NCBI RefSeq assembly: GCF_964204645.1
Contig: NC_134033.1
Location: 14,144,655 to 14,208,654, forward strand
Origin: Tubulanus polymorphus
Lineage: Eukaryota; Animalia; Nemertea
Direction: 5' to 3'
DNA: 64,000 nt
The position numbers and the translations under genes are program-made. The number at the start of each line of letters is the position of its first letter. Position 1 is the stretch's first letter. The notes beneath the pieces were generated by a model that saw only the letters and a program-made list of their open reading frames with translations, had not been told where the DNA came from and made no database searches. Positions 13,086-63,345 of this stretch are shown here, one piece after another.

Positions 13086-14220
13086 TGATTTGGCGGCATT
13101 TCTAAGTGGCATTTCTTTTCACGCTGTAATAAAATGAAGAAGCCAGATTTTCTAAGAATGCAAATGTTTCTCGTCACTGTAAATCATTTAACCACGTATT
13201 TCTTCGCAAACTTTTCACGTATCGAAAATTCTACGATTTTGGTTTCCGAGTCAGAGGAATTCAGGCGTAAGGAGCAATCTACATTTGGCTCGGTAGTCGT
13301 CGAAATTAGAATTCGAACGGCGCTTTCGGGGTTCGAACCTACCGACCACAAATTTTCGATGTATGTTTATGGCCGATTACTTATTTACCAGTCTGAATAC
13401 GACTTAAAGCTTCAAGCTATCTGTTGTCTTGCTGCCGCTAGAAATCGCTCCCGAAAAGCTTCCCCGAGCAACAGGAAAACGTGGCACAGGAGAAAAAAAG
13501 AAATGGGGTACCCGCAGTGCTACTGGGCAATCGAGGATTCCGCGTATGGCAGGCGAGGATCCGCCAGGTTCGCTAGTAGATCGATTTCTACTAGCGTTCG
13601 ATTTCTACTACATTACAATGAAATCTGAATGAAATTTTCTCTTAAATGAATCTATTATTCATATACCTACACCGATATCTGAGTAGAAGAATGAAGGTAT
13701 TGTATATTTGGTGGGTGCTATGATAATGTATGGAGTGGGGGTCAAAATATCCAGTTCAAAAATTCGAGACGGGGCGACCTACTGCTCTTCACGCCATCTG
13801 GTTTTGCGGGTACCCCATTACCGGCTGGAAACTGCTTGTGAAGCCGGTTCGAGTGCGCTTTTTGTCTGTAAAGAATATAGTTGCTGGGTTTCAACCACTT
13901 AGACCTTTAAAGCAAATTCATCTGTAAAATATTTACTTCAGAGCAGCGTATATTTATTAACCATCAGAAGGCGCAGAATGTAACATAAAACGCTCATATT
14001 CACGCGTACATTTGGAACGCTGTATAACCGCTTTACAAACAATCTGTAACGATACGAAAATAAAGTGTATATAATAACAAATTGCATCGAACCTGGTGTG
14101 CCACACACACAATAAGACGTATATATATCACATTTTTCGATGTTCACATTTCATTTCTTATTGAAATGCGATATTCAGGTAAGTGTAAAATTAAACAATA
14201 AGTTTTGGACTTACTGGCTG

Positions 14221-17200
14221 CTACACATTTTGGGCCTGCGCTTTCGATTTTCTGGTCACCGGGCCCTATAAAAAAAGCGGAATAAATAAATACCTATACA
14301 CATATTTTGAAAAAATTAAATATTATTACTGAATTGAAATTCAGCCTCGTTTTCCTCCCTTCCACTTCTTTACCGCTTGGATCGTTTTTTCTTGTTTTCT
14401 ACCTTGTGGTCTCTTGTTGTTAGCGTTCTTGCGAATAAGTTGTGGCGAAATTGGCTGAAAATCTATGATGATATTCTTTTTTCCTTTCACTCTTGTGTTT
14501 TTCTTGTTATTTGCTAGAGGAGCGTTCTGAATTCAGGAAATAAACGAAATCAGACACACGATTATCTCTCCAAATCCCCTCCTATCCCTCTGAACCATAC
14601 CCTGGTATTCTGGTTCTTTCCTCGTTTGCTATTTTTGTTAGCATTCTTTATACATGTACATGGTAGTTTGTTCACGAATCTTGACAATATCAACTTCATT
14701 CTAATGATTTTCTTATTTTTACCCACGAAACCATCCGCGAGACAGTGATATCATGAATTTGGCACTTTGACAGTTAATTAAGCTTTTCCCCTTTTCTTTC
14801 CCTTCCCTCTCCCTCTCTCATTTTCTGTCTATATTCTCCTCTTACCTGGATCGTATTCTTTTGTTTCTTTCCTTGTTTCTTAATATTGTTAGCTTTATTG
14901 ATGGTTTGTTGCCGAATCTTCTCTCCACCATTTTTCTTATTATTTCCATTGCCAATAATTCCATTACCATATATCCACTTCACTCCACCGCCATTTTTCT
15001 TATTATTTCCATTGCCATATATCCACTTCACTCCACCAACATTTTGCTTATTATTTCCATTGCCATTATTTCCACCATATATCCACTTCACTCCACCAAC
15101 ATTCGTCTTATTTTTTCCATTGCCATTATTTCCATTACCATATATCCACTTCACTCCACCAACATTTTGCTTATTATTTCCATTGCCATTATTTCCATTG
15201 CCATATATCCACTTCACTCCACCGCCATTTTTCTTACTATTTGCATTGCCAATAATTCCATTACCATATATCCACTTCACTCCACCAACATTTGTCTTAT
15301 TTTTTCCATTGCCATTATTTCCATTACCATATATCCACTTCACTCCACCGCCATTTTGCTTATTATTTCCATTGCCATTATTTCCATTGCCATATATCCA
15401 CTTCACTCCACCGCCATTTTTCTTACTATTTGCATTGCCAATAATTCCATTACCATGTATCCACTTCACTCCACCAACATTTGTCTTATTTTTTCCATTG
15501 CCAATAATTCCATTACCATATATCCACTTCACTCCACCGCCATTTTTCTTATTATTTCCATTGCCATATATCCACTTCACTCCACCAACATTTTGCTTAT
15601 TATTTCCATTGCCATTATTTCCACCATATATCCACTTCACTCCACCAACATTCGTCTTATTTTTTCCATTGCCATTATTTCCATTACCATATATCCACTT
15701 CACTCCACCGCCATTTTTCTTACTATTTGCATTGCCAATAATTCCATTACCATATATCCACTTCACTCCACCAACATTTGTCTTATTTTTTCCATTGCCA
15801 TTATTTCCATTACCATATATCCACTTCACTCCACCGCCATTTTGCTTATTATTTCCATTGCCATTATTTCCATTGCCATATATCCACTTCACTCCACCGC
15901 CATTTTTCTTACTATTTGCATTGCCAATAATTCCATTACCATATATCCACTTCACTCCACCAACATTTGTCTTATTTTTTCCATTGCCATTATTTCCATT
16001 ACCATATATCCACTTCACTCCACCGCCATTTTGCTTATTATTTCCATTGCCATATATCCACTTCACTCCACCGCCATTTTTCTTACTATTTGCATTGCCA
16101 ATAATTCCATTACCATGTATCCACTTCACTCCACCAACATTTGTCTTATTTTTTCCATTGCCAATAATTCCATTGCCATATATCCACTTCACTCCACCAA
16201 CGTTTTTCTTACTATTTCCATTGACATTATTTCCATTGCCATATATCCACTTCACTCCACCGCCATTTTGCTTATTATTTCCATTGCCATTATTTCCATT
16301 GCCATATATCCACTTCACTCCACCAACATTTTTCTTATTATTTCCATTGCCATATATCCACTTCACTCCACCGCCATTTTGCTTATTATTTCCATTGCCA
16401 TTATTTCCATTGCCATATATCCACTTCACTCCACCAACATATGTCTTATTTTTTCCATTGCCATTATTTCCATTACCATATATCCACTTCACTCCACCAA
16501 CGTTTTTCTTACTATTTCCATTGCCATTATTTCCATTGCCATATATCCACTTCACTCCACCGCCATTTTTCTTATTATTTACATTGCCAATAATTCCATT
16601 GCCATATATCCACTTCACTCCACCAACATTTTTCTTACTATTTCCATTGACATTATTTCCATTGCCATATATCCACTTCACTCCACCAACATTTGTCTTA
16701 TTTTTTCCATTGCCATTATTTCCATTACCATATATCCACTTCACTCCACCAACGTTTTTCTTACTATTTCCATTGACATTATTTCCATTGCCATATATCC
16801 ACTTCACTCCACCAACATTTGTCTTATTTTTTCCATTGCCATTATTTCCATTACCATATATCCACTTCACTCCACCAACGTTTTTCTTACTATTTCCATT
16901 GACATTATTTCCATTGCCATATATCCACTTCACTCCACCAACGTTTTTCTTACTATTTCCATTGACATTATTTCCATTGCCATATATCCACTTCACTCCA
17001 CCGCCATTTTGCTTATTATTTCCATTGCCATTATTTCCATTGCCATATATCCACTTCACTCCACCAACATTTTTCTTATTATTTCCATTGCCATTATTTC
17101 CATTGCCATATATCCACTTCACTCCACCGCCATTTTGCGTATTATTTCCATTGCCATTATTTCCATTGCCATATATCCACTTCACTCCACCGCCATTTTT

Positions 17201-20200
17201 CTTACTATTTGCATTGCCAATAATTCCATTACCATATATCCACTTCACTCCACCAACATATGTCTTATTTTTTCCATTGCCATTATTTCCATTACCATAT
17301 ATCCACTTCACTCCACCGCCATTTTTCTTATTATTTACATTGCCAATAATTCCATTGCCATATACCCACTTCACTCCACCAACGTTTTTCTTACTATTTC
17401 CATTAACATTATTTCCATTGCCATATATCCACTTCACTCCACCAACATTTGTCTTATTTTTTCCATTGCCATTATTTCCATTACCATATATCCACTTCAC
17501 TCCACCAACATTTTTCTTATTTTTTCCATTGCTATTATTACTATTACCATATATCCACTTCACTCCACCGCCATTTTTCTTATTATTTCCATTGCCATTA
17601 TTTCCATTGCCATATATCCACTTCACTCCACCGCCATTTTTCTTATTATTTCCATTGCCATATATCCACTTCACTCCACCAACGTTTGTCTTATTTTTTC
17701 CATTGCCATTATTTCCATTACCATATATCCACTTCACTCCACCGACATTTTGCTTATTAATTACATTGCCATTATTTCCATTGCCATATATCCACTTCAC
17801 TCCACCGCCATTTTTCTTATTATTACCATTGCCATTATTTCCATTGACAGATATCCTCTTCACTCCACCTTTCTTCTTCGTATTCTTTCCATTGACATAT
17901 ATCCTCTTTACCCCACCTTTCTTCTTATTCGTTCCAGTGACATATATCCTCTTTACTCCACCCTTCTTCTTATTCTTTCCATTGACAGATATCCTCTTTA
18001 CTCCACCTTTCTTCTTCTTATTCTTTCCATTGACATATATCCTCTTTACTCCACCTTTCTTCTTATTCTTTCCATTGACATATATCCTCTTTACTCCACC
18101 TTTCTTCTTCTTATTCTTTCCATTGCCATTTATCCTCTTCACTCCACCCTTCTTCTTATTCTTTCCATTGACATATATCCTGTTCACTCCACCCTTCTTC
18201 TTATTCTTTCCATTGACATATATCCTCTTCACTCCACCTTTCTTCTTATTCTTTCCATCGACATATATCCTCTTCACTCCACCTTTCTTCTTCTTATTAT
18301 TTCCATTGACAGATATTCTCTTCACTCCACCTTTCTTCTTATTCTTTCCATTGACATATATCCTCTTTACTCCACCTTTCTTCTTCCTATTCTTTCCATT
18401 GACAGATATCCTCTTCACTCCACCTTTTTTCTTATTCTTTCCGTTGCCATTTATCCTCTTTACTCCACCTTTCTTCTTCTTATTCTTTCCATTGACATAT
18501 ATCCTCTTTACTCCACCCGTCTTCTTATTCTTTCCATTGACAGATATCCTCTTTACTCCACCTTTCTTCTTCTTATTCTTTCCATTGACATTTATCCTCT
18601 TTACTCCGCCTTTCTTCTTATTCTTTCCATTGACATATATCCTCTTTACTCCACCTTTCTTCTTCTTATTCTTTCCATTGCCATTTATCCTCTTCACTCC
18701 ACCTTTCTTCTTCTTATTCTTTCCATTGCCATTTATCCTCTTCACTCCACCCTTCTTCTTATTCTTTCCATTGACATATATCCTCTTTACTCCACCTTTC
18801 TTCTTATTCTTTCCATTGACATATATCCTCTTCACTCCACCTTTCTTCTTATTCTTTCCATTGACAGATATCCTCTTTACTCCACCTTTCTTCTTCTTAT
18901 TCTTTCCATTGCCATATATCCTCTTTACTCCGCCTTTCTTCTTATTCTTTCCATTGCCATATATCCTCTTCACTCCACCTTTCTTCTTATTCTTTCCATT
19001 GCCATATATCCTCTTTACTCCGCCTTTCTTCTTATTCTTTCCATTGCCATATATCCTCTTCACTCCACCCTTCTTCTTATTCTTTCCATTGACATCTATC
19101 CTCTTCACTCCACCCTTCTTCTTATTCTTTCCATTGACAGAGATCCTCTTCACTCCACCTTTCTTCTTCTTATTCTTTCCATTGACATATATCCTCTTCA
19201 CTCCACCTTTCTTCTTCTTATTCTTTCCATTGCCATTTATCCTCTTCACTCCACCTTTGTTCTTCTTATTCTTTCCGTTGACATATATCCTCTTTACTCC
19301 ACCTTTCTTCTTATTCTTTCCATTGACATATATCCTCTTTACTCCACCTTTCTTCTTATTCTTTCCATTGCCATATATCCTCTTCACTCCACCTTTCTTC
19401 TTCTTATTCTTTCCATTGCCATTTATCCTCATTACTCCACCTTTCTTCTTCTTATTCTTTCCATTGACAGATATCCTCTTTACTCCACCTTTCTTCGTCT
19501 TATTCTTTCCATTGACAGATATCCTGTTTACTCCACCTTTCTTCTTATTCTTTCCATTGCCATATATCCTCTTCACTCCACCTTTCTTCTTCTTATTCTT
19601 TCCATTGCCATTTATCCTCTTCACTCCACCTTTCTTCTTATTCTTTCCATTGACATATATCCTCTTTACTCCGACTTTCTTCTTATTCTTTCCATTGCCA
19701 TATATCCTCTTCACTCCACCTTTCTTCTTATTCTTTCCATTGACATATATCCTCTTTACTCCACCTTTCTTCTTATTCTTTCCATAGCCATTTATCCTCT
19801 TCACTCCACCTTTCTTCTTATTCTTTCCATTGACATATATCCTCTTTACTCCACCTTTCTTCTTATTCTTTCCATTGCCATATATCCTCTTCACTCCACC
19901 TTTCTTCTTCTTATTCTTTCCATTGCCATTTATCCTCATTACTCCACCTTTCTTCTTCTTATTCTTTCCATTGACAGATATCCTCTTTACTCCACCTTTC
20001 TTCGTCTTATTCTTTCCATTGACAGATATCCTCTTTACTCCACCTTTCTTCTTATTCTTTCCATTGCCATATATCCTCTTCACTCCACCTTTCTTCTTCT
20101 TATTCTTTCCATTGCCATATATCCTCTTCACTCCACCTTTCTTCTTCTTATTCTTTCCATTGACATATATCCTCTTTACTCCACCTTTCTTCTTATTATT

Positions 20201-23200
20201 TCCATTGACAGATATCCTCTTTACTCCACCCGTCTTCTTATTCTTTCCGTTGCCATTTATCCTCTTCACTCCACCTTTCTTCTTCTTATTCTTTCCATTG
20301 CCATTTATCCTCTTCACTCCACCTTTCTTCTTCTTATTCTTTCCATTGCCATTTATCCTCTTCACTCCACCTTTCTTCTTCTTATTCTTTCCATTGCCAT
20401 TTATCCTCTTCACTCCACCTTTCTTCTTCTTATTCTTTCCATTGCCATTTATCCTCTTCACTCCACCTTTCTTCTTCTTATTCTTTCCATTGCCATTTAT
20501 CCTCTTCACTCCACCTTTCTTCTTCTTATTCTTTCCATTGCCATTTATCCTCTTCACTCCACCTTTCTTCTTCTTATTCTTTCCATTGCCATTTATCCTC
20601 TTCACTCCACCTTTCTTCTTCTTATTCTTTCCATTGCCATTTATCCTCTTCACTCCACCTTTCTTCTTCTTATTCTTTCCATTGCCATTTATCCTCTTTA
20701 CTCCACCTTTCTTCTTATTCTTTCCATTGCCATATATCCTCTTCACTCCACCTTTCTTCTTCTTATTCTTTCCATTGCCATTTATCCTCTTCACTCCACC
20801 TTTCTTCTTATTCTTTCCATTGCCATTTATCCTCTTTACTCCACCTTTCTTCTTCTTATTCTTTCCATTGCCATTTATCCTCTTTACTCCACCTTTCTTC
20901 TTCTTATTCTTTCCATTGACATATATCCTCTTCACTCCACCTTTCTTCTTATTCTTTCCATTGACAGAGATCCTCTTCACTCCACCTTTCTTCTTCTTAT
21001 TCTTTCCATTGCCATTTATCCTCTTCACTCCACCTTTCTTCTTCTTATTCTTTCCATTGCCATTTATCCTCTTCACTCCACCTTTCTTCTTCTTGTTCTT
21101 TCCATTGCCATATATCCTCTTTACTCCACCTTTCTTCTTATTCTTTCCATTGACATATATCCTTTTTACTCCACCTTTCTTCTTATTCTTTCCATTGCCA
21201 TTTATTCTCTTCACTCCACCTTTCTTCTTCTTATTCTTTCCATTGACAGATATCCTCTTTACTCCACCTTTCTTCTTATTATTCTTTCCATTGACAGATA
21301 TCCTCTTTACTCCACCTTTCTTCTTATTATTCTTTCCATTGACAGATATCCTCTTCACTCCACCTTTCTTCTTCTTATTCTTTCCGTTGCCATTTATCCT
21401 CATTACTCCACCTTTCTTCTTCTTATTCTTTCCATTGACAGATATCCTCTTTACTCCACCTTTCTTCTTATTATTTCCATTGACAGATATCCTCTTAACT
21501 CCACCCTTCTTCTTCTTATTCTTTCCATTGATATATATCCTCTTTACTCCACCTTTCTTCTTATTCTTTCCATTGACATATATCCTCTTCACTCCACCCT
21601 TCTTCTTATTCTTTCCATTGCCATATATCCTCTTTACTCCACCTTTCGTCTTATTATTTCCATTGCCATATATCCACTTCACTCCACCCTTCTTATTATT
21701 TCCATTGCCATATATCGACTTCACTCCTCCGCCATTTTTCTTATTCTTTCCATTGCCATATATCGACTTCACTCCTCCGCCATTTTTCTTGTTATTTCCA
21801 TTGCCATATATCCACTTTATCCCGCCCTTCTTATCATTTCCTTTGCCATATATCGACTTCACTCCACCATTCTTATTCTTTCCATTGCCATATATCGACT
21901 TCACTCCACCCTTCTTATTATTTCCATTGCCATATATCCACTTCACTCCACCCTTCTTATTCTTTCCATTGCCATATATCCACTTCACTCTACCCTTCTT
22001 ATTATTTCCATTGCCATATATCCACTTCACTCCTCCGCCATTTTTCTTATTCTTTCCATTGCCATATATCCACTTCACTCCACCCTTCTTATTCTTTCCA
22101 TTGCCATATATCCACTTTACTCCGCCCTTCTTATTATTTCCATTGCCATATATCCACTTCACTCCACCCTTCTTATTCTTTCCATTGCCATATATCCACT
22201 TCACTCTACCCTTCTTATTATTTCCATTGCCATATATCCACTTCACTCCTCCGCCATTTTTCTTATTCTTTCCATTGCCATATATCCACTTCACTCCACC
22301 CTTCTTATTCTTTCCATTGCCATATATCCACTTTACTCCGCCCTTCTTATTATTTCCATTGCCATATATCCACTTCACTCCTCCGCCATTTTTCTTATCA
22401 TTTCCTTTGCCATATATCCACTTCACTCCACCCTTCTTATTATTTCCATTGCCATATATCCACTTCACTCCACCCTTCTTATTATTTCCATTGCCATATA
22501 TCCACTTCACTCCACCCTTCTTATTCTTTCCATTGCCATATATCCACTTCACTTCACCCTTCCTATTCTTTCCATTGCCATATATCCACTTCACTCCACC
22601 ACCGTTTTTCTTGTTGTTTCCCACAAGAACATGCTGGAGACAGAGAAATAACAATTTCAGAACTTCATCAATAATGTCGGCTTTCCCCATGTTCCTCCTC
22701 TTCCTTCTCCCTGCCCTTCTCACTACATTCCTTAACCTCTATTTTTTTTCTTCTTACCGTCTTGTACGTATTCTTATTGATTGTTTGTCGCTGAATCTTC
22801 ACATTCTTCCCCTTCGCGCTACAATTTTTCGTTATCTTCCCTACAGCAACTTCCTGGAGAAACAATGATTCAATTACTTGAAAATAATAGTAACTATTCT
22901 TATCGTAACATTATCATCACTCATTGCTTTATACTCATTTATTCCTCAACTTTCATTTGAAATTGTGCGGAAATTTTTGAAACATTGTATTTTGTGCATT
23001 AAGATTATTTTTATATCATATAGATTGATTAAACTGTCGCATCATTTTATTAAGTAAAAACGACCCGAAACGTTAGAGCTATATGTACCAGCTTCAGACG
23101 AACGAACCCACCGGGCGATCTAAATTGAGACAAGGATTTCCGTTCCACATTTAGGGCGCGATTTTTCTTATCAATTTCACCTGCAAAATGAAGGAGATCA

Positions 23201-24821
23201 TCTCATCTTGGTAAGAGGCAAATCTTTCCATTCCCACCCCCGCTGCACTGGACTCGAAACTGTAAAGGCGGGAACATAGATTAGAGGCATGAGTTTAATC
23301 ATGATGCATTGTTTGAAATAAATAAAGTCGCAACAAGAAAGCAAGTTTCCTAAAAGGTAGAATAGCTATACTCTGACGTGAAGAACAGATGATGATTTCA
23401 AAACTTACCGCATACAGAAATTAATAGATTAAAAACGAATTCTATCATTCAAGAATTAAATTCAAAAGACACGACGTTTCATACTCTCACTAGAGATCAA
23501 CGTCATCTGAAAATAATAATTATAGAATTCGTTTTAAATCTTTTGAGTTCTGTATATAGTGGGTTTTAAACTTATTAAGTTGTATAAACAAGAATACTAA
23601 CTTGCAAGTTTATTGACACATTGAAAAACAACACACATGTATTTATATTGTCGACAATGAATATGTTATTATGAATGATATACACATGTGGTATATGTCA
23701 AGGATCAACGGAATTCTTTGTGAATTTGCATATATCGACGATTGAATTGAACTGACTGGGACCAGTCTAGCGCCAGTAATGAACGAACGAACGAACGAAC
23801 GAACGAACGAACGAACGAACGAACGAACGAACGAACGAACGAACGAACGAACGAACGAACGAACGAACGAACGAACGAACGAACGAACGAAGAAATGTAA
23901 TAAAAAAAACACGCTCACAGTCAACCCTCAACACAAAGAATGGGGACATAATAAACTATGATAACTGTTTGATTAAGAGCTACCTATGTAATCATCTAAT
24001 AAGCCAGTTGTTTTCTCTGTAATTCTTCAATCATCAAGTGCATACTTTTAATGTAACTATAATTTCAGTTTGAATTAGAGGATACCTGTATAATGTAATC
24101 ATTCAGTAAGCATAAGTTGTTTACTGTTATTCCTCAGAAACAGTTTTGAATTTTCCAGATTTATCAGATTGTCACTGATGTTATGCCAAAGTAAAGGGCC
24201 GGATATTTTCACTGAAAATTTTCTTTTTAGGCTATTGTCAGAAACTGTGTGTAAATCTTGACGTCGCCGAGTATCGTGACTGTGTGGATTTGAAAATTTT
24301 GGCTTCAATGATTTTCGAATGATTCCGCTAATTCAGAGTTGACGAATTTGTAAATAAAAGTACCTCGTTAAACTAAAACTCCATGCCAGAAAATGCTTTA
24401 CCCATTTCTTCGGGGGGTTATTTGAAGTGAATATCAGTGGAATATATTCAACGCGATCTTTGTGACTGTCAAAATGTATCAAAATGACGACGTAAGCGAA
24501 TCAACACGCATTAATTACAGAAATCGGCACCGCACGTGTTTTTATTATCACCAATTGAAAATAACGACATTGTGAAAAATGACTCTATTCAAATAATTGA
24601 GCGTGGGAGGAATATCAGTTGTTGATGGTCAATATTGTGGGTTTTCAATACGTTCAAAGCGCGCTGATAGTATTGAGATCTGGTCGGATATAGCTCGGAA
24701 AGGGTTAACGTATCTTACCTAGAGCGCGTTTATCTCGATCTTTCTCGTGTTCATCCCTTGAGTTGACAACGGCTGCCAACAACAACACAGTCGCCGCGCC
24801 AATGAAAACTAAACTCCGCAT
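14221..24821 (-). CDS. Gene A: secreted giant Gly/Lys/Asn-rich repeat protein, ~2758 aa; complement(join(14221..14265,14374..14526,14846..22633,22758..22853,23089..23180,24719..24821))
   Basis: Signal peptide MRSLVFIGAATVLLLAAVVNS plus propeptide ending RDKR. All introns are GT-AG with compatible phases. Flanking exons are homologous to gene B exons. The 7788-nt exon is stop-free and its variation is largely synonymous in this frame. Confidence 0.8.
14601..14735 (-). pseudogene. Probable dead duplicate exon of gene A
   Basis: Homologous to the ends of the giant exon (ctgtctcgcg|GATGGTTTCGTGGGTAAAAAT vs ctgtctccag|CATGTTCTTGTGGGAAACAAC). The acceptor AG is replaced by CG, the KIREQT motif is out of frame, and the donor is retained. 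Confidence 0.55.
14925..22605 (-). repeat. Coding tandem array of roughly 150 units in three blocks: GGVKWIYGNG(K/N)NKK; GGVKRI(Y/S/N)(V/G)NGKNKKK(K); GGVKWIYGNGNNGNGxNKxN(G/V)
   Basis: Units of 42-63 bp, all multiples of 3; block boundaries near 21665 and 17845. Confidence 0.95.
23469..23508 (-). ncRNA. Decayed copy of the hammerhead/Penelope-end motif seen at 6005
   Basis: Reverse complement ATGACGTTGATCTCTAGTGAGAGTATGAAACGTCGTGT shares TGATCTC..GAGA..GAAACGTCGTGT. Confidence 0.4.
23781..23890 (+). repeat. (GAAC)n microsatellite
   Basis: About 27 perfect tetramers. Confidence 0.98.
24095..24360 (-). mobile_element. Non-LTR retrotransposon (CR1/L2-like) ORF2 C-terminal relic
   Basis: Translation HSHDTRRRQDLH..KFSVKISGPLLWHNI resembles the HxYxTR...S...GPxxWN tail typical of these clades. 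Confidence 0.55.
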
Positions 24822-26649
24822 CGCACTGGAAATATGTATGGCATCTTTGATTAACTAACGTGACGGCTTTTCAAATGCAAAGCCGAATCAGAAGAAACCT
24901 TTAGATGGAAAGGTGATAAGTTTTTCGTCAAATGTGTATTGAATACTACGAAAAAAATGAGAGCAAGCTTTTCGTGCATAAAATACCTTTTCGTCTGGTT
25001 ATGAATGAATTTCCGTTTCAGCAGTTATAGATCGTTCTCGAACAAAGCGGGCAGAACGTACCGTCACACAACGCGACGCAAGAGAAGATTGAACAGAACT
25101 GCACCGGGGCACTGGTGTTTAGGTCCCGAAATCGATGTTGAAGGACCTCTCTGTCTTCCGATAATGTAATGTTACCAATTGACTGCACTTAAGAATTCGT
25201 AACTTTTCTCGAATAAGGATCGGAACTATAGAATTCACATCGTACTTATTAACAGCTGTTCAACTCATAATGTGATGAAAGAAGATATCGAAAGTACATC
25301 TAACATTGCGTCTTGTGACTAAATGATAATCTGATCGAGACGTCAAGTTGGACTGCGAAATAGAGTTGACATCATCTTTCTCGGAGTCCTCTATTCCACT
25401 CGTTTGGAGCACCTAGAAATCCAACTAATTTCATCAAAGTTAAGTCGGATCGAAATGCCGACTGAGTTTCGCTTCATTCACGCCAGTTGATGGGGAATCC
25501 TGGCTCTGTAATGGCCAAATATTTATCGTGGGACCAAAAGGATTTTTTCACACGCCGGCGCAACCAGCGTGCCGTTGAAATCCGATCAATACATCGGCCG
25601 TTTTCGAGAATTATTGATATAATAGTTAAGTGTCTTACAGTCATTGTATGAATTTTCATTGTAATAACAGCTGCCAATTAGGTCTCGTCTCTCAATAGTC
25701 TTTATATCTTATTCTTGTTTAATTGATTCGATTTTATCTTGTTAAGTAATGTTATACATCGCTGGTTTACTAGCTACTGCGGCAATTGAAGATCCAATAG
25801 ATCAATGGAATTGAAACAAGCTATACACAAATTACAAAGATCGAAAATGAATATTTATTATTCAGGAATATAACACTGATTAGGACACAACGTTTGGGAC
25901 TGGGTATAGTTCTAAGCCCGGCTTGGCATGGAATATTTCTTGTTTTTATTTTGTCTTCACAATTCCGATCTTGTTATTTCGATGTGTTGATTTATTGGCT
26001 TGTTAATATAATTCTCAAATATGAATTCGCGAGATATGCTGATCAAATTGGCGAGCGTATCGATATCCTATCATCCTTGAATGAAAATGATTTTATGAAC
26101 AGGTTGGACCGCCAAGCTTGGAAGTTTGTAATAAATATTTGTAGTGATAATTCCAATATTATTGATTCCGCATCCATTTTATATGAATAGGATTTGAATC
26201 GGTGTCTCAAACCTGCGACACAATTTGTAAACAAGTAAAAAGAGATGCACCAGGGCCCAATTTCACGAAGGGGAATTAAGAATTTTCTTTCAGTTTTTTC
26301 TTATTGATATTTTTTCGGCCTTTTACGTTGATATCGCACCAGTTATGATATATTTGATAAATGCCCGTGTTTAAAGCCTGACAGGCAACAACATTTCCCA
26401 TGCGTACAGAAATATTGAACACACAGTTTTTATCAATGAACTTTTCGTATGTGCATCTAGGCGTGTATCTGTAATAGGTCGCAAGTTTCAACCATTTCCT
26501 TCTGTATAGCGCCTTATTATGGGGTTTCTTAATACATGCGATGGGATATAGCGATTTATAATTTGCAAAAAGGTAATTATATTTTTCTATCCGAATTCAA
26601 GCATCCAGATGCACATAAGAGAATTGATTAGTATTGGAATTTCTTTTTC

Positions 26650-29600
26650 TTATTTCTTGCCTTTGTTTCGTGCTCTGACTGATTTCATATCAATAGTTAG
26701 AATGGTGTAAAGCAATGGGTTCAGAGTTGAGTTTATGGGTAAGAAAAGAACGGACAGCCAAGCAGCGACCTGGTTCGGTATCTCGACCGAAAAAACCACA
26801 CAGAATTGAACGATTATTAACGGTAGCCAACAAAACAAATTACACAGATTAATGACTAAACTGCGTCGAGCTAGAACGAGTTCCGTAGGATCAGCTCTAC
26901 CCGAACCGGACCTGCTTCCAGATACAAGCCTGTACATCTGCGCATACGTCACCATTATCAGAATGAGGATGATCGCGTTTAATACAGCAAATATAGCGAA
27001 CGAATATTGCCAACCTTTGACATTGATAGAGATTAAGTTCATAGGTAGACACACACCTGTGGTACCATAAAATCTGTCTCCGAAATAAGACAATTCTGAA
27101 AGCGGTAGTAAAGCAGATATTCCTAGCGTCATCCAGCATAGACAGCACATTCCACATATAGATTTCGGGGATAAAAGTGGGTTACCAGAAAATGGATCAA
27201 CGATGTTTGAATATCTGAAACGCGTTAGGAGAAACAGAAATGTCAATGAGCCTTCGCACGATAACATTACCACAACTCCGGCAACCTTGCATAATGAACT
27301 ACGAGTCCAGGTTTCAGAATGGAGAAAATAAACACCTTTATAAACGAAATCAGCGCCAGCGATCAGAAGCAAATAAATTGCCATCAGAAAATCACATACC
27401 GCAATATTAATGATGAATACATCTGAAGTTTTGGTTTTCGTTTTTGATGAAATCATGATTGATTTTGAACGAAGTAAAATGACTATACCGTTTGCCAAAA
27501 AACTGAAAAATGCAATTACCCAGATTACAGCTCTGAGGACGGTGTTGTCCATGAGATCTGAACACGATGAAAATTGATCAGGATCCGGGAGACACCGGTC
27601 AATGTTAGGTACCATACAGCAGAATTTGTACGCGTCTGAAGCGAGAAAGAATAATGACGTCAGATTATCGAAGATATTGCTTTCTACGGAAATTATTTGA
27701 AAGTTGTTGGAAAAATCCAGAACTCCTAAAGATCTGAGCCCGGAAAAAGCGTACGAGGATATTGCATTGATTGCATTATTGCTCACGTTCAAAGATTTCA
27801 GCGCAGGTAAACCTCGAAATATATACGGACCAAGAACAGATATAGAGAGACCGTGAAGATCGAGAACCGGAAGTGAGATCAAACCATTGAAACTACCTTC
27901 ATTCAAATATCTTAGTGGATTTCCAGTGAGGACAAGTTCCTTTAAACTCTTTAAACCAAGGAATGTATTTGCAGGTATTGATACTAGACGGTTATGAGAA
28001 AGATCTAAAGAATTTAGATTGTGTAGTTTAGAAAACGCATTGGACACGATGTCTGATAGATTATTATATGAAATATCGAGTACACGAAGATATACAAAAA
28101 GGAAAAATGTCGTTACGTTAAGTAAAATGCTGTTGTTTGTGAGAATTAAAACTCGAGTCGCAGCCGGAAAAATTCCAGATATATCTGACAAACTTGCATT
28201 TTCGCAATTGATGAAATGACCTTGGCATTTACAACCTTTAGGACACGTTTCGTCACAGTAGGCTTCGTCATCCGAGTTATGAATACAATTAACGACACCA
28301 TCACAAACTTCCAACTGCGGAATACATCGATTTTCATCTCCGCATTTAAACATTCCTGGACATGAAAATGTTTTACAACTTAATTCATCTTCTGAATTAG
28401 GACAATCAGTTTGTCCATCACACACCTGTCTGATTGGTATACAGTAAGATGATGGACATTTCACTGTACCAGCTGGACATTCAAATTCACTGCAATCCAG
28501 TAAATGTTCGAGCCTTCTACATGTAGGAAAACCCGTGGCCTTTCTTTCGAAAATACATCTGTCTCGTCTCGAATAACAATGCGGAGATTCGAACGAACAT
28601 CTTTGTTCATCGGTTTCATTACAAAGATTTGTAAATTCAGTCGTACAATATTCTTCACGGTTGCAGTGGATCGTTGGGTTAACAGTTATATTAGTAACTA
28701 TCTCATCTTCTTCCAGTTCACCACCGCAATCAACAATACCATCCCGATACAATAGAGAACTGATACATTCACCATTTACACACAAAAACCCGTTACATTT
28801 GTCCGGAGTGCAGCCGATCTCGTCGGATTTATCTTCACAATGAACCAGTCCATCGCATCTTTTATATGTACCCACGCATTTTCCATTGTTACACCTAAAC
28901 TGTTCTGAGGAACATAAAGTACGATAGCACGAGTTCTCATCTGATCCGTCAACGCAATCTCGTACGAAATCACAAACATTACTGACTGATATAACCTGTC
29001 CATCGTAGCACTGGAATTGGCTCAATGAATTAGAACTTTGACAATTAAGTTCATCTTCTCCGTGTTGACAGTCCTTTCTGGAATCACAAACACGATGTTT
29101 GCTGATACATCTGGCATCGTTACATTCAAACTGCCAGGATTTGCACCCGCTTACAGATGATGATTCATCACTAGTTCTGTTATAGGAACATAACACAGAA
29201 TGCGCTTTATCTGTGATATTATTGAAAGCTGCTAATGACCATTTCGCGATAGTGATATATGTGACGGCATCTCTAGTTACAACTGGTTTTATTGCCAGAA
29301 ATCCACCTCCGTTGCTATCCTTGGTTAGTATATTACCATAATGGTGCTGATAGTGGAACAATTTTATCAAATACGGAATTTCAATGTTAGATGATATCAT
29401 ACCTATGTTTCCGCCGATTGTAAGACACATTCTCCTGGCAGTCTGAACTGCCAATGATTCAGTGTTGAGTGATTCCCAGGCTGTAAGTATCTGATAGCAA
29501 CGTCTTTTAATCCTAATCCAACCTCTTAAACACGTTGAGTCAACTACATCTAACCAATTCCTCATTTTACTAATAGTATCGTTTTGTGAATGTTCCATCG

Positions 29601-32600: not shown

Positions 32601-32948
32601 TTTGCGACACCACAATTGTAAATCGTAGTATATTCGAATTCGAAACAGGCCCGGTAAAGAGCTGTTTACTGTCCAACGACATTTAACATCGCGTACTAAC
32701 GACGGATAGTTCGGTGAAAAGATGATACCAGACGTAGAATTGACCGAGTACCAAGTGTTGTTACACGATGAAGTGACAGTTATTGTCGGTTTCTCGGTGG
32801 AGCTCCGATCAGCGGTAGTGCTCTGAGTTGTGGTAGAGCTTTGAGGCGTGGTAGGGCTGCTCCGAGTCGTTGTAGCGCTCTGAGTCGCAGTTTGTGAAAT
32901 AATCAGTAGAATCAGTAGAATCAGCAATAACTCCGTGAAACGTGTCAT
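26650..32948 (-). CDS. Gene C: GRL101-like LDLa/LRR GPCR with CUB and C-type lectin domains, ~1965 aa; complement(join(26650..29898,30137..31495,31659..32948))
   Basis: Signal peptide, Thr/Ser-rich stretch, CUB motifs (SGIIFSPNYP, YDG), CTL motifs (WEDAELYC, IGL..WTDG), ~7 LDLa repeats, LRRs, hinge YKFCC..DQFSSCSDLM, 7TM ending PINSTLNPLLY. Both introns are phase-0 GT-AG. Confidence 0.9.
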
Positions 32949-33784
32949 GATGTTGTCGACGGAATGAATTGTGAATTCTCTACACCCAACTCGATTCGCG
33001 AATCCATATTTTTTTCTATTTTATTTTCACATTCAAATTTTCTCTGGACCAATCATCTACATGCAGGTTAGTTTGAATTACGTATCATTTTTAAATAACG
33101 GTTTCGTGAACTTATTTTTTTACCGGAAAAAAAAATAACCAAAGGTCGTTTTTCGGACAGTTTAATTTGAATTTAACAATATCTATTTTATCATGTAGTT
33201 TTCTTTCTTTTTTCTGTTCCGAAACCATTCCGATCTAAATTCAATTAAAAACGAAGTTTTTGTCATAATTTCATATTGTTGTACCTACACTCTCGCAACT
33301 TAGGAAAAGCTGACAATTTCGAACTGATGCTACTGCACTGAGAACATGAAAAAATAATGTTCAACAATTATCATTCAAACAAATGAGAAAACATTCAAAA
33401 AGGATTATCATCAGACTGATTCAGATTCTTGCTTCTAATGCGTATGCACTTAGAATAGAAACGTATTTCTTGCTTGCTGATTAGAAATTTGTTAGTTCAT
33501 TGAGGAGATCATCGGTTCTTAGTTGTTTATGGTACGAATACGGATATTTTTGACACTCCAACCATTTCCATGGTATATGGAGGAAAAATAGTATTTACAA
33601 TAATTACATAAAAGGTAATAAAATCTTTTAAAACTTCATAAACTGGATTCACACTTGAATACATGATATACTATTTACATATATACTATCGGAGGGATTT
33701 GTATACATCTAGACCTATTTTGATAAATTTAGCCAAATTTAAAGTTGGATTTTTTAATACATTTAAGTTCAGAAAATTATGGCC

Positions 33785-38610: not shown

Positions 38611-38763
38611 TCGCAAACCATCTTGCCCTTTAAATCAATTTGTTCATAAATCATTTATACCACGTATTTACTTCACAGAAGCGTTTTATTACCCATTATA
38701 CTCAGAATGGAACACAAAACACGCTCAAATACACGTATATATTTGGAATGCCGTATTACCGCT

Positions 38764-41700
38764 TTACAAACAATCTGAAACGAAAACCAAATATACAATG
38801 GCGAATTGCAACGAACCTGGTGTGCCACACAAAATATAACATATGAATCATATTTATCAATGTTTGTATTTGCTTTGATATAGAAGTATATTTGAGAAGG
38901 CCAAGGTCGAGGGGGTTTGCGAACTTTGAATGTTTTCTGCTTAATTCCTGTAACAAATCATTAAGTTCATTGAGTACATAAGTTTTGTGTGGACGTTTTA
39001 TTGGGCGGGCCCCTTACTAAAATGAAATGCAATATCTGATTCGTTGTATTTCGTATTGCATTTGAGAATTTCATCGTATTTTAATTAGTCTAAGCTAGAT
39101 GACGAAGTCAAACTAAACGATGCCATCAGGTTCGAATCCCAGCAGGGGAATATTTGATATACTGTTGGACTTACTCGCTGCGACACATATCGGGTCTTGA
39201 GCCGAGATACAGTTACCATTCATTCGTAGATAGTTCGGCTTACAGGTACATGCGTGGATAGTGGGTAGATCGCAGAGCTCGGGTTGGGCGGCGTTAGGGG
39301 CGTCGCATGTTGCTTCACAAGATACTTTCTTGTATTCTTCATTCGCTCCGCAATTGACAACTGTTGCAAAGAGAAAATTAACATCTAAGCCGTCCATCGA
39401 ATAAAACCAAGAATGAATTACTTTAGAGATCAGCATTTGGAGAAGCGGCCCACATTTGGAAAATGCGAAGTTTACAAATATCTCAGATTTATTTAGGAGT
39501 TCGTCATCTTGTTTGTGAATAACTGAATGCACAATATACACAATTTGTCTATACTCACCGCATCCGGTCTTTTTACGCCATTTTTCTGTCACGGTGAAGT
39601 TATTCTGTCGACAATCGTCTGCTAGTGATTTCAATAGGTCGCAGACGATACCTTTACGATCCGCCTCAGTCGGCGCCGAACACACGTCCAGAACGCAGTC
39701 GTCGCGCAACGCCTTGCGGTCCTGCTTCGATTTAGCGGATAGACATTTGCCAAACGAAAATTTAGATCGAGTTTTCGTCAGCAATCCGCAGTATTGTTCG
39801 TGGGAAGAGTAGGTGGTCTTGTTAACGCACGGCGGAGGGTTCGGAGGGTCGACCAGGCAGCTAGAAAATAGAACGAGAAGAATTAGAAGCAATCAATACC
39901 GAGGACGCAAATCGAATGTCTATACAAGATGTCTGAAGGAGAACTAACGCTAATGAGTATTTCTATGACCTGATATACACGGGGATTTTGAGTCATTTTT
40001 ACGATTTAAACGTAACGCAAAAAAGTCGTAGCCGAATCTGAAAGACAAAGTTAAGTTACGGACTTACTCTTTGGCGATGGTCCCGTTCTCATTTGGAACG
40101 ACGAAACTCTTTCCCAGGACATTGTAACCAGCCTGATCGTCAGTAACGACGTTACCATTTTTGTCGACCATTTGATCACGTTTTGACGAGCCACATCTTC
40201 CGCAGATTCCTGAAAAGAATTTCGGTCTATCACATCGTTTAGAATTAAGTCAAAATGACAAATTCATGTATTTCTAGGAGTTCTAGGAGAACGCATTTGC
40301 AAAGAATCGTGATTTTTGTCTACAGTTTGTTTGCTGCTTGGCATTTACGAGTTGGTGAATGGAGCCAAAGTTTCCACGTTGTGGAACAAACACTTTACCT
40401 TTTGTCTTGTTCATATATCTACTTTTATCGAGGTAAACGTTCACAACCGTACTTCCATCATAAGTGACCTTGACCCCGCACGACGGAACGTTGAACATTA
40501 CATCCGTACTGCCTACATCAGTGATCTCTATACCATTTTTAGTGTAGTAAGGTAACGATACCTGCGCTCCATCGACCTGTATCATAAGAAAAGTCGCATT
40601 ACACGGTGCTGTATCGATTCAGTCAGTAAGCCGATTCTGGTGGCTCATCCTCGGGATTCGAAAATGATGGCCACCAGACTCTGAGCCACGTACGACTTTT
40701 TTAAATCAGTGGTCCATCTAGACACAACACTTCTATTGGTAGGTAAGCAATATTGTTTCTTTTCACACATATAGAAAATGAATCTGGATCGTTTTTTGTT
40801 GTCATTCTAACATGGTTCGTTCCATTTCAGAACAGAGCAACAAGAAATATCTGTTCTAAATGAACGCTTCTTATGAACGCAAGGTATGTTCTAAATTGGA
40901 ACGGACTACAAATTGTCATATCTGATGAAAAAGTAGCGCGTGACCGAGGGTATCCTCGTGAATAGGCCCATGTCAATTCAGCGATTACCTCGACAATCTT
41001 ATTTCTTCTGAAAGTTACGGAAACTCCCCCGAAGAACGAAGTGACCGATTTCGTGTAGGAAACGCTGTTCAATTTCCTGCCGTCTTTGAATCTGCCGGGT
41101 TGATTCGTCGTTCGTACGTGCACGCTGCAATTCCCGGCCGCCGTCTCGACTAACGTGTACGAACATTGGCCTTGAAAGTTGAAACGTTTTCCACCAAATG
41201 ACTTATAGTGCGGATCTCCTCTGGCTTGACATTTACACGTGTTTTTAGCTAAAATAAACGAACGGCGCTCGTATAGACTATTTTGACGGTAAAAAGCAGC
41301 AACTATTGCGGTTTACAGGACTAGTACACCAGCCCTTGCACTAACCTCTGAATCTCTTCCTTTTCCCTGATTTCCTCGTCACCGGGGCCTTTCATAGATA
41401 AGTAGGAAATATTTGTCTAAAAGTTCAGCATTTTGAATAGATTACATCCTCTCCTTCTCCCTCACCCCTCTTACCGTATTTATAGTATCCTTTTGTTTCT
41501 TTCCTTTCTTTTTCTTTTTATTAGCTCTCCTGGTAGATTGTTGTGGCTCGCTTGGTTGAACTGTAGTGTTCTGCAAAACAAAACGAAGCCAGAATACATG
41601 ATTACATCTCTTCCCCTCTTCCTCCCCTCTCCCCTCTTCCCTTCTCCCCTCTCCCCTCTTCCCCTCGTCTCCACGTTCCTTCTTCGCCCTTCCATTTAAA

Positions 41701-42348
41701 ATCAACATCTAACCGGGGAAAAACTAAAATAAACTATCGGACTATTTACACGTAGAAAACGACCAAAAAAACTAAAAATGGACAAAATGATCTTCAACCT
41801 TGTAATATAGCTGTTTCCAAAATTTCGATGTATTAAATTAGGCAGCCATGAAAATTCAACCCAATCAGTCGCTTGCCGGTTCAGACTGAATGGAAGATTG
41901 TTTGATTGAACCCGAACCGAATTTCCCAATTATGTACTTCGATTTAAACAAAAAACCTTTGTAAACTCGACCGCCGATCACACAACTATATCTGTACTTC
42001 GATTTCCGATAACAAAATCAAACCCCCTGTTTCGCTCCCGGCAGGTGTGGTGGGTCTGTTAGGGACAGCCAATCAAAAAAATCAAACGAAATCTACCAAT
42101 CAAATAAATAACAGGGTCAATCCATATTTTAAGATTTAAAAAAACAACAAAAACAATGAAATAGGTAAATTTTAAAACCTGTTGTTTTTGTTTTGCTGGT
42201 CTTTTGCCTCTTTTCCGTTTGAAAAGATGAACGAACCCATCGAACGACCTAGATTCAGGCAGCCATCTACGTTTCCTATCTAGGTCACGATTTTCATCGT
42301 CCATTTCAACTGCAAAAATGAAGCAACGTCCAATCGAAAAGAAATTCA

Positions 42349-42380
<32 letters not shown>

Positions 42381-42628
42381 CATACACTGTAATTTCATTT
42401 ACATAAGTACATACGGTATCGGACTTTTTTATTGATTTTAGGGTGACTCGATTTTCGAGTCATATTTTTTAGCTTAGGTGACAATTATGGTCGGTTATAG
42501 CTCGGAAAGGGTTAACGTATCTTACCTAGAGCGCGTTTATCTCGATCTTTCTCGTGTTCATCCCTTGAGTTGACAACGGCTGCCAACAACAACACAGTCG
42601 CCGCGCCAATGAAAACTAAACCTCGCAT
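38764..42628 (-). CDS. Gene B: secreted basic-leader + VWD-C8-TIL protein, ~483 aa; complement(join(38764..38774,39175..39360,39559..39860,40068..40209,40399..40576,40989..41248,41346..41388,41475..41570,42179..42309,42526..42628))
   Basis: Signal peptide + RDKR; VWD motifs CQARGDPHYKSF..FNFQGQCSYTLV and KGICG; C8 motif DCVLDVC..C..LADDC..W; TIL motif CGANEEY..CEATC..CTCKPNY..NGNCI. All ten exons are phase-compatible; the 42179 donor is weak. Confidence 0.85.
41929..42150 (+). mobile_element. Dispersed ~220-bp repeat, second copy at 59353-59570
   Basis: Shared sequence ATTATGTACTTCGATTTAAA..ACTCGACCGCCGATCAC..TTTCGCTCCCGGCAGGTGTGGTGGGT. Confidence 0.75.
42347..42381 (+). repeat. (GCAC)n microsatellite
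   Basis: About 8 tetramers. Confidence 0.9.

Positions 42629-56263: not shown

Positions 56264-63345
<7,082 letters not shown>

What the first reader, a model, noticed from the sequence alone, without database searches (positions are those of the whole stretch)
14221..24821. Giant secreted cationic Gly/Lys/Asn/Tyr/Trp block-copolymer protein hidden in what looks like a satellite
Seen: the 7.8-kb repeat is a single phase-0 exon (22633-14846) with clean splice sites. It splices to a signal peptide + RDKR propeptide exon and to short Lys-rich exons, giving ~2758 aa built from GGVK(W/R)IYGNG..KK units. Known: G/K/Y-rich cationic repeat proteins occur in marine glues and matrices (sandcastle-worm cement protein Pc1, mussel foot proteins mfp-3/5, pearl-oyster KRMP), and Gly-Asn-Asn repeats occur in nacrein. 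Inference: an uncharacterised structural or adhesive secretion protein (tube, cement, mucus or cocoon). It may form short beta-strands with NG turns and cross-link through Tyr/Lys. Processing at KK/KR sites into cationic peptides is an alternative. I do not recognise this repeat unit from any named protein.
Basis: partly seen in the sequence, partly recalled or inferred. Interest (0 to 1): 0.92.

Follow-up and report, generated by a model that had tools for sequence, protein, structure and literature searches.

The report
Giant cationic repeat-protein gene, untranscribed evidence
A 7.8-kb tandem repeat in what is probably a ribbon-worm genome reads as one huge exon of a secreted, extremely lysine-rich repeat protein that arose from a neighbouring mucin-type (VWD-C8-TIL) gene; sequence statistics favour a real coding gene, but no RNA data were available to show that it is expressed.

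Summary
Window 22633-14846 (minus strand) is one open 7,788-nt stretch with GT-AG borders. With five small flanking exons it gives a 2,758-aa model: signal peptide, RDKR site, then about 150 units of GGVK(W/R)IYGNG..KK in three blocks.

New here:
- The array is a single locus in the 268-Mb genome.
- A paralogue 18 kb away shares the signal-peptide exon (95% identical), exon 2, one Lys-rich exon, a PVTRKS exon and the 3'UTR exon, but carries VWD-C8-TIL domains. The repeat gene is therefore a duplicate that lost VWD-C8-TIL, multiplied the Lys-rich exon, and expanded one copy about 80-fold.
- Only the predicted frame lacks stop-making variants (0 seen, 5 expected) and also has excess synonymous variants (joint P about 1.5e-4).
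- A sister exon copy that lost its acceptor has decayed.

No homologue was found among 1.8 billion representative proteins, and there is no Pfam match. No RNA run was available, so transcription, splicing and secretion remain untested.

A neighbouring gene's best hit (60% identity) is to the nemertean Tubulanus polymorphus.

Best reading: a young, lineage-specific secreted polycation (net charge about +730 in the giant exon), probably a mucus, tube or adhesive component. The function is inferred.

The parts
24719..24821 (-). Exon 1: ATG, signal peptide (MRSLVFIGAATVLLLAAVVNS) and acidic pro-segment ending in RDKR. Ends in phase 1 at G|GTAAGA.
   Evidence: Sequence read. It is 95% identical over 172 nt to exon 1 of the VWD-C8-TIL paralogue at 42654-42488.
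23089..23180 (-). Exon 2 (92 nt): ..GEIDKKNRALNVERKSLSQFRSPGGFVRLKL. Acceptor ttttgcag, donor GTACAT.
   Evidence: It is 74% identical to paralogue exon 2 (42323-42225).
22758..22853 (-). Exon 3 (96 nt, phase 0-0): Lys-rich module EVAVGKITKNCSAKGKNVKIQRQTINKNTYKT.
   Evidence: The module alignment with exon 5, the ends of exon 4 and paralogue exon 3 is.
14846..22633 (-). Exon 4: 7,788 nt, 2,596 codons, phase 0-0, no stop. Acceptor tctccag|CAT, donor CAG|GTAAGA. It is a Lys-rich module whose middle expanded to about 150 units. Its last 74 nt, plus the donor, match the end of paralogue exon 3.
   Evidence: 14911-14838 against 41543-41467, 74%.
21686..22597 (-). Block A: 21 units of 14 or 16 aa, GGVKWIYGNG(N/K)NKK. 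304 aa, net charge +73.
   Evidence: AlphaFold2 on residues 1-250 of exon 4: pLDDT 67.6, strands every 14 aa.
17867..21685 (-). Block B: 82 units of 15 or 16 aa, GGVKRI(NG/YV/YG/SV)NGKNKKK(K). 1,273 aa, net charge +513, with one KR site per unit.
14987..17866 (-). Block C: 47 units, mostly 21 aa, GGVKWIYGNGNNGNGKNKTNV. 960 aa, net charge +131, 46 Trp, 46 Tyr. It holds most of the exon's 18 N-x-S/T sequons.
   Evidence: AlphaFold2 pLDDT is only 45.
14601..14726 (-). Decayed copy of the Lys-rich module (pseudo-exon). The acceptor CAG has become CGG, there is a frameshift between its two halves, and the homologous frame holds two stops.
14374..14526 (-). Exon 5 (153 nt, phase 0-0): unexpanded Lys-rich module NAPLANNKKNTRVKGKKNIIIDFQPISPQLIRKNANNKRPQGRKQEKTIQA.
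   Evidence: It is unique in the genome.
14215..14265 (-). Exon 6: GPVTRKSKAQAQNV, with stop TAG at 14223-14221, followed by donor CCA|GTAAGT. It is a chimera of the paralogue's PVTRKS exon and the last 33 nt of its TIL exon. This is the scar of a deletion of about 2.2 kb that removed VWD-C8-TIL.
   Evidence: (14237-14205 against 39197-39165, 85%).
13930..14043 (-). Probable 3'UTR exon after acceptor gttacag, with AATAAA at 13958-13953. It is homologous to the paralogue's last exon and 3'UTR.
   Evidence: (14165-13930 against 38885-38665, 75%; the core is more conserved) and the alignment.
38650..42628 (-). Parent-type paralogue: the same signal-peptide exon (42628-42526), exon 2 (42309-42179), a single Lys-rich exon (41570-41475), a PVTRKS exon (41388-41346), then VWD, C8 and TIL exons and a homologous 3' end.
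   Evidence: Pfam: VWD 1.8e-10 and 1.1e-4, C8 6.9e-9, TIL 1.3e-5.

Best explanation
This is a young, lineage-specific protein-coding gene, most likely of a nemertean.

Origin (shown by sequence comparison). It began as a duplicate of the neighbouring secreted VWD-C8-TIL gene. It kept that gene's signal-peptide/RDKR exon, exon 2, splice sites and polyadenylation exon. It lost the VWD-C8-TIL part through a deletion of about 2.2 kb. It duplicated the Lys-rich linker exon into four modules, and one module expanded internally to about 150 units.

Product (inferred). A secreted polypeptide of about 2,700 aa, with no Cys and almost no acidic residues, and a net charge near +750. It is laid out as Trp/Tyr-rich block A, hyper-cationic Arg/Lys block B, and Trp/Tyr/Asn-rich block C.

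Mechanism (inferred, not shown). After signal-peptide removal, and probably furin-type cleavage at RDKR, the protein would be packed with polyanionic mucus glycans. Once released, it would act as a polycationic cross-linker or adhesive in mucus, tube or cement. Binding would come from charge pairing plus cation-pi and aromatic contacts of the V-K-W-I-Y strands. Blocks A and C would serve as stickers and block B as a charged spacer.
For: 1. The model is exact. All ten splice sites are canonical, the phases fit, and it totals 2,758 aa.
2. The array is a single locus in 268 Mb, not a dispersed satellite.
3. It shares a complete transcription-unit frame with an intact VWD-C8-TIL paralogue: exon 1 at 95%, exon 2 at 74%, the end of the Lys-rich exon plus its donor at 74%, the PVTRKS exon, and the 3'UTR exon with AATAAA. 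VWD-C8-TIL domains are extracellular, which supports the shared exon 1 being a true signal peptide.
4. Among 89 distinct unit variants, none makes a stop in the predicted frame against 5.0 expected (P=0.005). Synonymous variants are in excess, 28 against 20.4 (P=0.022; joint P=1.5e-4). The other frames carry stop-making variants at the expected rates.
5. All unit-length variants are multiples of 3.
6. Internal control: a sister module that lost its acceptor has a frameshift and two stops within about 130 nt, whereas exons 3, 4 and 5 are intact.
7. Composition: K 25%, G 25%, N 20%, 106 Tyr, 65 Trp, only 6 Asp+Glu, no Cys.
Against: - There is no expression evidence. The only runs holding the sequence are DNA contigs from one study, with no splice joints.
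- There is no homologue in any other organism, so conservation cannot be shown.
- The gene has lost the only recognisable domains of its parent and stops right at the deletion scar, as a decaying duplicate also might.
- Units are homogenised. Blocks A and C share an identical 33-nt consensus core, so the array may be too young for neutral decay to show.
- Many length changes are explained by slippage of AAG triplets or of a 15-nt sub-repeat, which preserves frame without selection.
- pN/pS is only 0.31-0.73, and one antisense frame shows a similar synonymous excess.
- All module exons are phase 0-0, so the giant exon could be skipped.
- Structure prediction is weak, with no fold match.
- The function rests on composition alone.
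Confidence: 0.45

Rival explanations
1. Non-functional relic. A partial duplicate of the VWD-C8-TIL gene lost its domains and now ends at the deletion scar. One purine-rich exon turned into a minisatellite that expanded recently by unequal crossing-over. The open frame persists only because the array is young and its indels are triplet slippage.
For: - Deletion of VWD-C8-TIL, with a stop 6 nt before the old TIL donor.
- One module is already dead.
- No homologue was found anywhere.
- No RNA evidence.
- Indels fit slippage of AAG or of a 15-nt sub-repeat.
- Two plus-strand frames are also open or nearly open.
Against: - Stop-making variants are absent only in the predicted frame (0 against 5.0 expected; P=0.005), and synonymous variants are in excess there.
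- All ten splice sites, the ATG, and exons 2, 3 and 5 are intact, although exon 2 and the end of the Lys-rich exon have diverged about 26% from the paralogue.
- The three blocks have diverged from one another, including a W-to-R change and units of 14 to 21 aa, so the array is not the product of one very recent burst.
Confidence: 0.27
2. Polyprotein precursor. The repeat is cut at its dibasic sites (KR inside every block B unit, KK to KKKK between units) by prohormone-convertase-type enzymes. This would release about 150 short Gly/Asn/Tyr/Trp peptides, for example for antimicrobial or signalling use in mucus.
For: - There are 77 KR and 127 KK(+) sites at fixed positions in the units.
- An RDKR site follows the signal peptide.
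- Known Gly/Tyr/Trp-rich peptide families are made from multi-copy precursors (my own knowledge; not tested here).
Against: - After trimming, the products would be peptides of 7-19 residues with almost no charge, and no Gly in position for amidation. That is unlike typical cationic antimicrobial peptides.
- Units vary freely at several positions.
- Precursors this long are unusual.
- No related peptide family was found.
Confidence: 0.1
3. The gene is expressed, but the giant exon is normally skipped. Because every module exon is phase 0-0, exon 3 can join exon 5 and give a small secreted Lys-rich protein of about 160 aa. The array would then behave as intronic satellite.
For: - Exons 3, 4 and 5 are all symmetric, phase 0-0.
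- A 7.8-kb internal exon is hard to define for the spliceosome (general knowledge).
- One neighbouring module is already skipped as a pseudo-exon.
Against: - Frame-specific depletion of stop-making variants in the array.
- The array is bounded by a good acceptor (tctctgtctccag) and a GTAAGA donor homologous to the paralogue's.
- Giant repeat exons are normal in mucin genes (general knowledge).
Confidence: 0.1

Closest known systems
Gel-forming mucins / von Willebrand-type proteins (VWD-C8-TIL modules with a giant central tandem-repeat exon, e.g. MUC2, MUC5AC)
   Same: It is secreted, and one multi-kb exon encodes a tandem-repeat polymer. The gene is a duplicate of a VWD-C8-TIL gene, and the repeat sits where that gene has its N-terminal linker.
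   Different: This gene has lost VWD-C8-TIL. It has no Cys, so no disulfide multimerisation is possible. Its repeats are Gly/Lys/Asn/Tyr/Trp and strongly cationic, not Pro/Thr/Ser O-glycosylation repeats (S+T is about 2%).
Cationic Gly/Lys/Tyr cement and adhesive proteins (sandcastle-worm Pc1/Pc2, mussel mfp-1/-3/-5)
   Same: Secreted, basic, Gly/Lys/Tyr-rich short tandem units. The plausible mode of action is charge pairing with polyanions plus aromatic and cation-pi contacts. This is analogy from my own knowledge.
   Different: No sequence similarity was detected in any search. It is 10-20 times larger. Asn (20%) and Trp are prominent. The unit is new. DOPA or other modification is unknown.
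Heavy-chain fibroins / spidroins (giant repeat exons with block architecture)
   Same: A giant single exon with a block-copolymer layout, repeat homogenisation by unequal crossing-over, and short beta-prone motifs separated by Gly-rich turns.
   Different: It lacks the conserved terminal domains. The charge density is extreme (+0.28 per residue), which argues against a self-sufficient beta-crystalline fibre. No homology was found.
Sel1-like repeats (the best-looking chance hits, sharing Y-x-N-G-x-G-V ... V-K-W)
   Same: Local motif resemblance: WIYG, YANGKGV, AVKW.
   Different: The best hit scores only 69 bits, with 18-46% identity among all hits. Sel1 units are about 36 aa and helical. Here the units are 14-21 aa and predicted as beta or disordered. 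It is not a member.

Membership tests
VWD-C8-TIL (mucin / von Willebrand type) proteins | Presence of VWD, C8 and TIL domains | tested here: not met
   The repeat exon has no Pfam hit. tblastn of the paralogue's VWD, C8 and TIL segments finds nothing downstream of the gene. The last coding exon is a PVTRKS-exon/TIL-tail chimera, marking their deletion. The paralogue at 42.6-38.6 kb does meet this feature.
VWD-C8-TIL (mucin / von Willebrand type) proteins | Common descent, shown by shared exons | tested here: met
   Exon 1 is 95% identical, exon 2 74%, the Lys-rich exon end plus donor 74%, and the 3'UTR exon 75% to the paralogue.
Gel-forming mucins | Pro/Thr/Ser-rich O-glycosylated central repeats | tested here: not met
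   S is 1.4% and T 0.9%, and Pro does not appear among the residues counted in the exon. G, K and N together make 71%.
Gel-forming mucins | Giant single repeat exon | tested here: met
   A 7,788-nt open exon with canonical borders. Its use in mRNA was not tested.
Pc1/mfp-type cationic adhesive proteins | Sequence relationship of the repeat unit | tested here: not met
   No related protein among 5.8 billion clusters in the length range, nor among 1.84 billion representatives of any length.
Pc1/mfp-type cationic adhesive proteins | Secreted, basic, Gly/Lys/Tyr-rich tandem repeats | tested here: met
   A signal-peptide exon is present. K is 25%, G 25%, Y 4.1%, and net charge is +729. This is composition only.
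Pc1/mfp-type cationic adhesive proteins | Location in adhesive or cement secretion; DOPA or cross-link chemistry | not testable with these tools
   This needs proteomics, histology and chemistry.
Any curated protein family (Pfam-A) | Match above the gathering score | tested here: not met
   Three 300-aa samples, one each from blocks A, B and C, gave 0 families at E<=0.01.
Beta-solenoid / beta-helix repeat folds | Confident model with a structural match | tested here: inconclusive
   The block A model has pLDDT 67.6 in the best of five models (range 27.9-67.6), and block C has 45.1. Foldseek against the PDB gave E>=0.39 and TM<=0.27.

The most novel reading that the evidence does not exclude
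The window captures the birth of a new biomaterial gene. A linker exon of a mucin-type VWD-C8-TIL gene ran away into a 150-unit array, giving a roughly 290-kDa 'sticker-spacer-sticker' polycation (net charge about +750; Trp/Tyr/Asn-rich ends, Lys/Arg core). This protein would be the cationic partner that condenses and glues anionic ribbon-worm mucus or tube material. That would be a Lys-Trp-Tyr-Asn adhesive chemistry with no known relative.
Probability: 0.2. Interest if true: 0.75.

Novelty: new variant of a known kind. Interest (0 to 1): 0.5.

Why it matters
If it is expressed, this would be one of the most highly charged large secreted proteins described, with a repeat unit that has no relative in public protein data. 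Ribbon-worm mucus and tube materials are almost unstudied at the molecular level.

The locus also records, step by step, how such a gene can form. The steps are duplication of a mucin-type gene, loss of its folded domains, exon multiplication, and runaway expansion within one exon. The parent gene and a dead sister exon are preserved next to it as controls.

This offers a concrete case for studying how repeat proteins are born, and a candidate for bio-inspired wet adhesives or coacervates. If it is not expressed, it is only an exon-derived minisatellite in a decaying duplicate.

Tried and rejected
RNA evidence.
- The look-up of sequencing runs returned only three runs from one study, none recorded as RNA.
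- On 22540-23780 it showed one continuous DNA contig (X1). X2 and X3 gave only short contigs (151-419 nt) that include intron sequence. There were no splice joints.

Homology.
- The full-length giant exon gave 0 hits.
- The last 1,200 aa against 1.84 billion representatives gave 63 weak hits. All are unrelated periodic proteins (Sel1, LRR, others), which I rejected as chance or periodicity matches.
- Pfam gave nothing.
- Protein-level search of the organism's own genome found only other, unrelated coding minisatellites.

Joined model. Exons were handled by reference, one at a time. The three short N-terminal exons are too short for the protein searches.

Comparative locus. The Tubulanus polymorphus protein P0064, apparent orthologue of the neighbouring receptor, could not be traced to a contig, so synteny could not be checked.

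Selection test. Pairwise pN/pS was not decisive on its own, because an antisense frame scored similarly. I replaced it with the six-frame permutation test.

Structure. The AlphaFold2 models were low to moderate in confidence and Foldseek found nothing. No fold is claimed.

Literature. Two nemertean venom and mucus proteomics papers (PMC9132205, PMC10674772) mention no Lys/Gly-rich repeat protein.

Other points.
- I rejected a dispersed-satellite reading, because the array is single-locus.
- Complex prediction and the third homologous-protein search were not used. Neither would have changed the verdict.


Full report
**Observation.**
Tandem Repeats Finder reports one array at about 14959-22600, with periods of 48, 63, 93, 126 and 189 nt, all multiples of three. 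The minus strand is open from 14774 to 22723. Its translation is a monotonous series of GGVK(W/R)IYGNG..KK units.

I read all junctions directly:
- exon 1: 24821-24719, MRSLVFIGAATVLLLAAVVNSRDEHEKDRDKRAL, phase 1, donor GTAAGA
- exon 2: 23180-23089
- exon 3: 22853-22758
- exon 4: 22633-14846, 7,788 nt, 2,596 codons
- exon 5: 14526-14374
- exon 6: 14265-14221, ending in TAG

All junctions are GT-AG and the phases fit.

The units form three blocks:
- Block A: 21 units of 14 or 16 aa, W-type.
- Block B: 82 units of 15 or 16 aa, R-type; 1,273 aa, net charge +513.
- Block C: 47 units, mostly 21 aa, W-type with an extra NNGNG.

Exon 4 is 25% Gly, 25% Lys and 20% Asn. It has 106 Tyr, 65 Trp, six acidic residues and no Cys. 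Its net charge is +729.

**Is it more than a satellite that happens to be open?**
Openness alone is not evidence. Two plus-strand frames are also open or nearly open (0 and 1 stop), because pyrimidine-rich codons lie far from stop codons. I therefore used three other tests.

1. Genomic distribution. The array is a single locus in the 268-Mb assembly, at both DNA and protein level.
2. Variant pattern. I collapsed the units to 89 distinct variants relative to block consensus, then re-dealt each variant among positions with the same consensus base.
   - In the predicted frame, no variant makes a stop, against 5.0 expected (P=0.005).
   - In the same frame, 28 variants are synonymous against 20.4 expected (P=0.022). 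The joint P is 1.5e-4.
   - In the other five frames, stop-making variants occur at expected rates: 4 against 4.8, 14 against 11.8, 0 against 1.0, 2 against 3.2, and 6 against 3.8.
   - Only one antisense frame shares the synonymous excess, because of codon-position overlap.
3. Internal control. Between exons 4 and 5 lies a further copy of the same Lys-rich module (14726-14601). Its acceptor has changed from CAG to CGG. It has also acquired a frameshift and two stops in the homologous frame within about 130 nt. Exons 3, 4 and 5 are intact.

Caveats:
- Unit-length variants are all multiples of three, but most are AAG-triplet or 15-nt sub-repeat slippage, which preserves frame mechanically.
- pN/pS is only 0.31-0.73.
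- The units are homogenised, so the array may be young.

**Origin.**
A self-search of the 5' region found a second copy of exon 1 in the same window. That gene runs on the minus strand from 42628 to about 38650. It has:
- the same signal-peptide/RDKR exon, 95% identical over 172 nt;
- a homologous exon 2 (74%);
- a single Lys-rich exon whose end and donor align with the end of the giant exon (74%);
- a small PVTRKS exon;
- exons that match Pfam VWD (1.8e-10 and 1.1e-4), C8 (6.9e-9) and TIL (1.3e-5).

In the repeat gene, the last coding exon is a chimera. It joins the PVTRKS exon to the final 33 nt of the TIL exon (85% identical). After it come the same GTAAGT donor, and a homologous terminal exon carrying the same AATAAA at 13958-13953.

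The repeat gene is therefore a duplicate of a VWD-C8-TIL gene with these changes:
- a deletion of about 2.2 kb removed the three domains;
- the reading frame shifts at the scar and stops 6 nt before the old donor;
- the Lys-rich exon was multiplied into four modules (exon 3, exon 4, the pseudo-exon and exon 5);
- one module expanded internally about 80-fold.

The duplicate retained the start codon, every splice site and the polyadenylation exon. Because VWD-C8-TIL domains are extracellular, the shared first exon is very likely a genuine signal peptide.

**Relatives elsewhere.**
- The whole exon found nothing among candidates of 0.55-1.75 times its length.
- An exhaustive phmmer of its last 1,200 aa against 1.84 billion representatives gave 63 hits. 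The best scores 69 bits, and all are unrelated periodic proteins such as Sel1-like and LRR.
- Pfam has no match.

The unit is an orphan.

**Organism.**
The adjacent LGR-type receptor ORF (26653-29910) is 60% identical to a Tubulanus polymorphus protein. The next hits are at about 35%. The organism is therefore most likely a nemertean. This rests on one gene.

The T. polymorphus locus could not be fetched.

**Expression.**
It could not be tested. The only runs that hold the stretch come from one study. X1 gives a continuous genomic contig across the introns. X2 and X3 give short contigs of 151-419 nt that include intron sequence. No splice joints were seen. The tool cannot lay reads inside the array.

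Exons were treated one by one by reference.

**Structure.**
- Block A, AlphaFold2 on a single sequence: 8-residue strands (GVKWIYGN) every 14 residues, pLDDT 67.6 and pTM 0.73. Only the best of five models reaches this (range 27.9-67.6).
- Block C, with an alignment of shifted windows: pLDDT 45.
- Foldseek against the PDB gave no match, with E>=0.39 and TM<=0.27.

I claim only a beta-strand/turn propensity.

**Mechanism (inferred).**
- The protein would be secreted through the shared signal peptide.
- It would probably be trimmed at RDKR.
- With about +0.28 charge per residue and no Cys, it should be an extended polyelectrolyte unless paired with polyanions.
- The layout is a Trp/Tyr block, then a Lys/Arg block, then a Trp/Tyr/Asn block. 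This suggests a sticker-spacer-sticker polycation that condenses or cross-links anionic mucus or tube components.
- This is analogous to, but not related to, cationic cement proteins of tube worms and mussels.

Alternatives:
- a relic pseudogene with an exon-derived minisatellite;
- a polyprotein cut at the 77 KR and 127 KK(+) sites;
- habitual skipping of the giant exon, which is possible because all module exons are phase 0-0.

**Verdict.**
- The coding reading is favoured (about 0.6-0.65), but expression is unproven.
- The adhesive or structural function is plausible but only inferred.
- The origin from a mucin-type paralogue is the firmest new result.

Noticed in passing
window 38650-42628 (minus strand): An apparently intact small secreted gene. 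Its layout is signal peptide + RDKR, Arg/Lys-rich linker, then VWD, C8 and TIL domains. It is the parent-type paralogue of the repeat gene. Its VWD has no close copy elsewhere in the genome; the next best is 49% identical, on contig C8.
   Followed up: partly
window 23891-24365, plus (GAAC)28 at 23781-23891: Intron 1 holds an interspersed element of about 475 bp, with more than 40 copies at 74-85% identity across the genome. In this copy the tetranucleotide microsatellite follows directly. It looks like a SINE-type element.
   Followed up: partly
window 24822-24852 and 42629-42654: Both paralogues conserve about 30 nt upstream of the ATG, ending in an acceptor-like ATATTTCCAG|TGCG ATG. Homology stops abruptly further upstream. 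There may be an upstream non-coding exon, or the 95%-identical block may be a gene-conversion tract.
   Followed up: no
window 26653-33020 (minus strand): Three very long open segments lie in series. They carry CUB, C-type lectin, 4 LDLa, LRR and rhodopsin-type 7TM domains, as in an LGR/GRL101-type receptor. The best hit is 60% identity to Tubulanus polymorphus, which points to a nemertean genome.
   Followed up: partly
window 56264-57682 (minus strand): The 21-nt tandem repeat with raised G+C encodes YSPTSPS heptads. This is the C-terminal domain of the RNA polymerase II largest subunit, an ordinary gene.
   Followed up: yes
window 41929-42147 and 59352-59567: A 219-nt stretch in the paralogue's intron 2 recurs at 88.6% identity near 59.4 kb. 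It is probably another interspersed repeat.
   Followed up: no
L032 (G000:C10:10998600-11001100): A 2.4-kb array is open in four frames at once. One frame gives a Ser/Thr/Asn-rich unit, SSGTCSGEVNTDNT. It shows that multi-frame openness of triplet-periodic arrays is common in this genome, so openness alone is weak evidence for coding.
   Followed up: no
The site lies about 0.7-1 kb downstream of the VWD-C8-TIL paralogue's polyadenylation signal, and I did not examine it.
   Followed up: no
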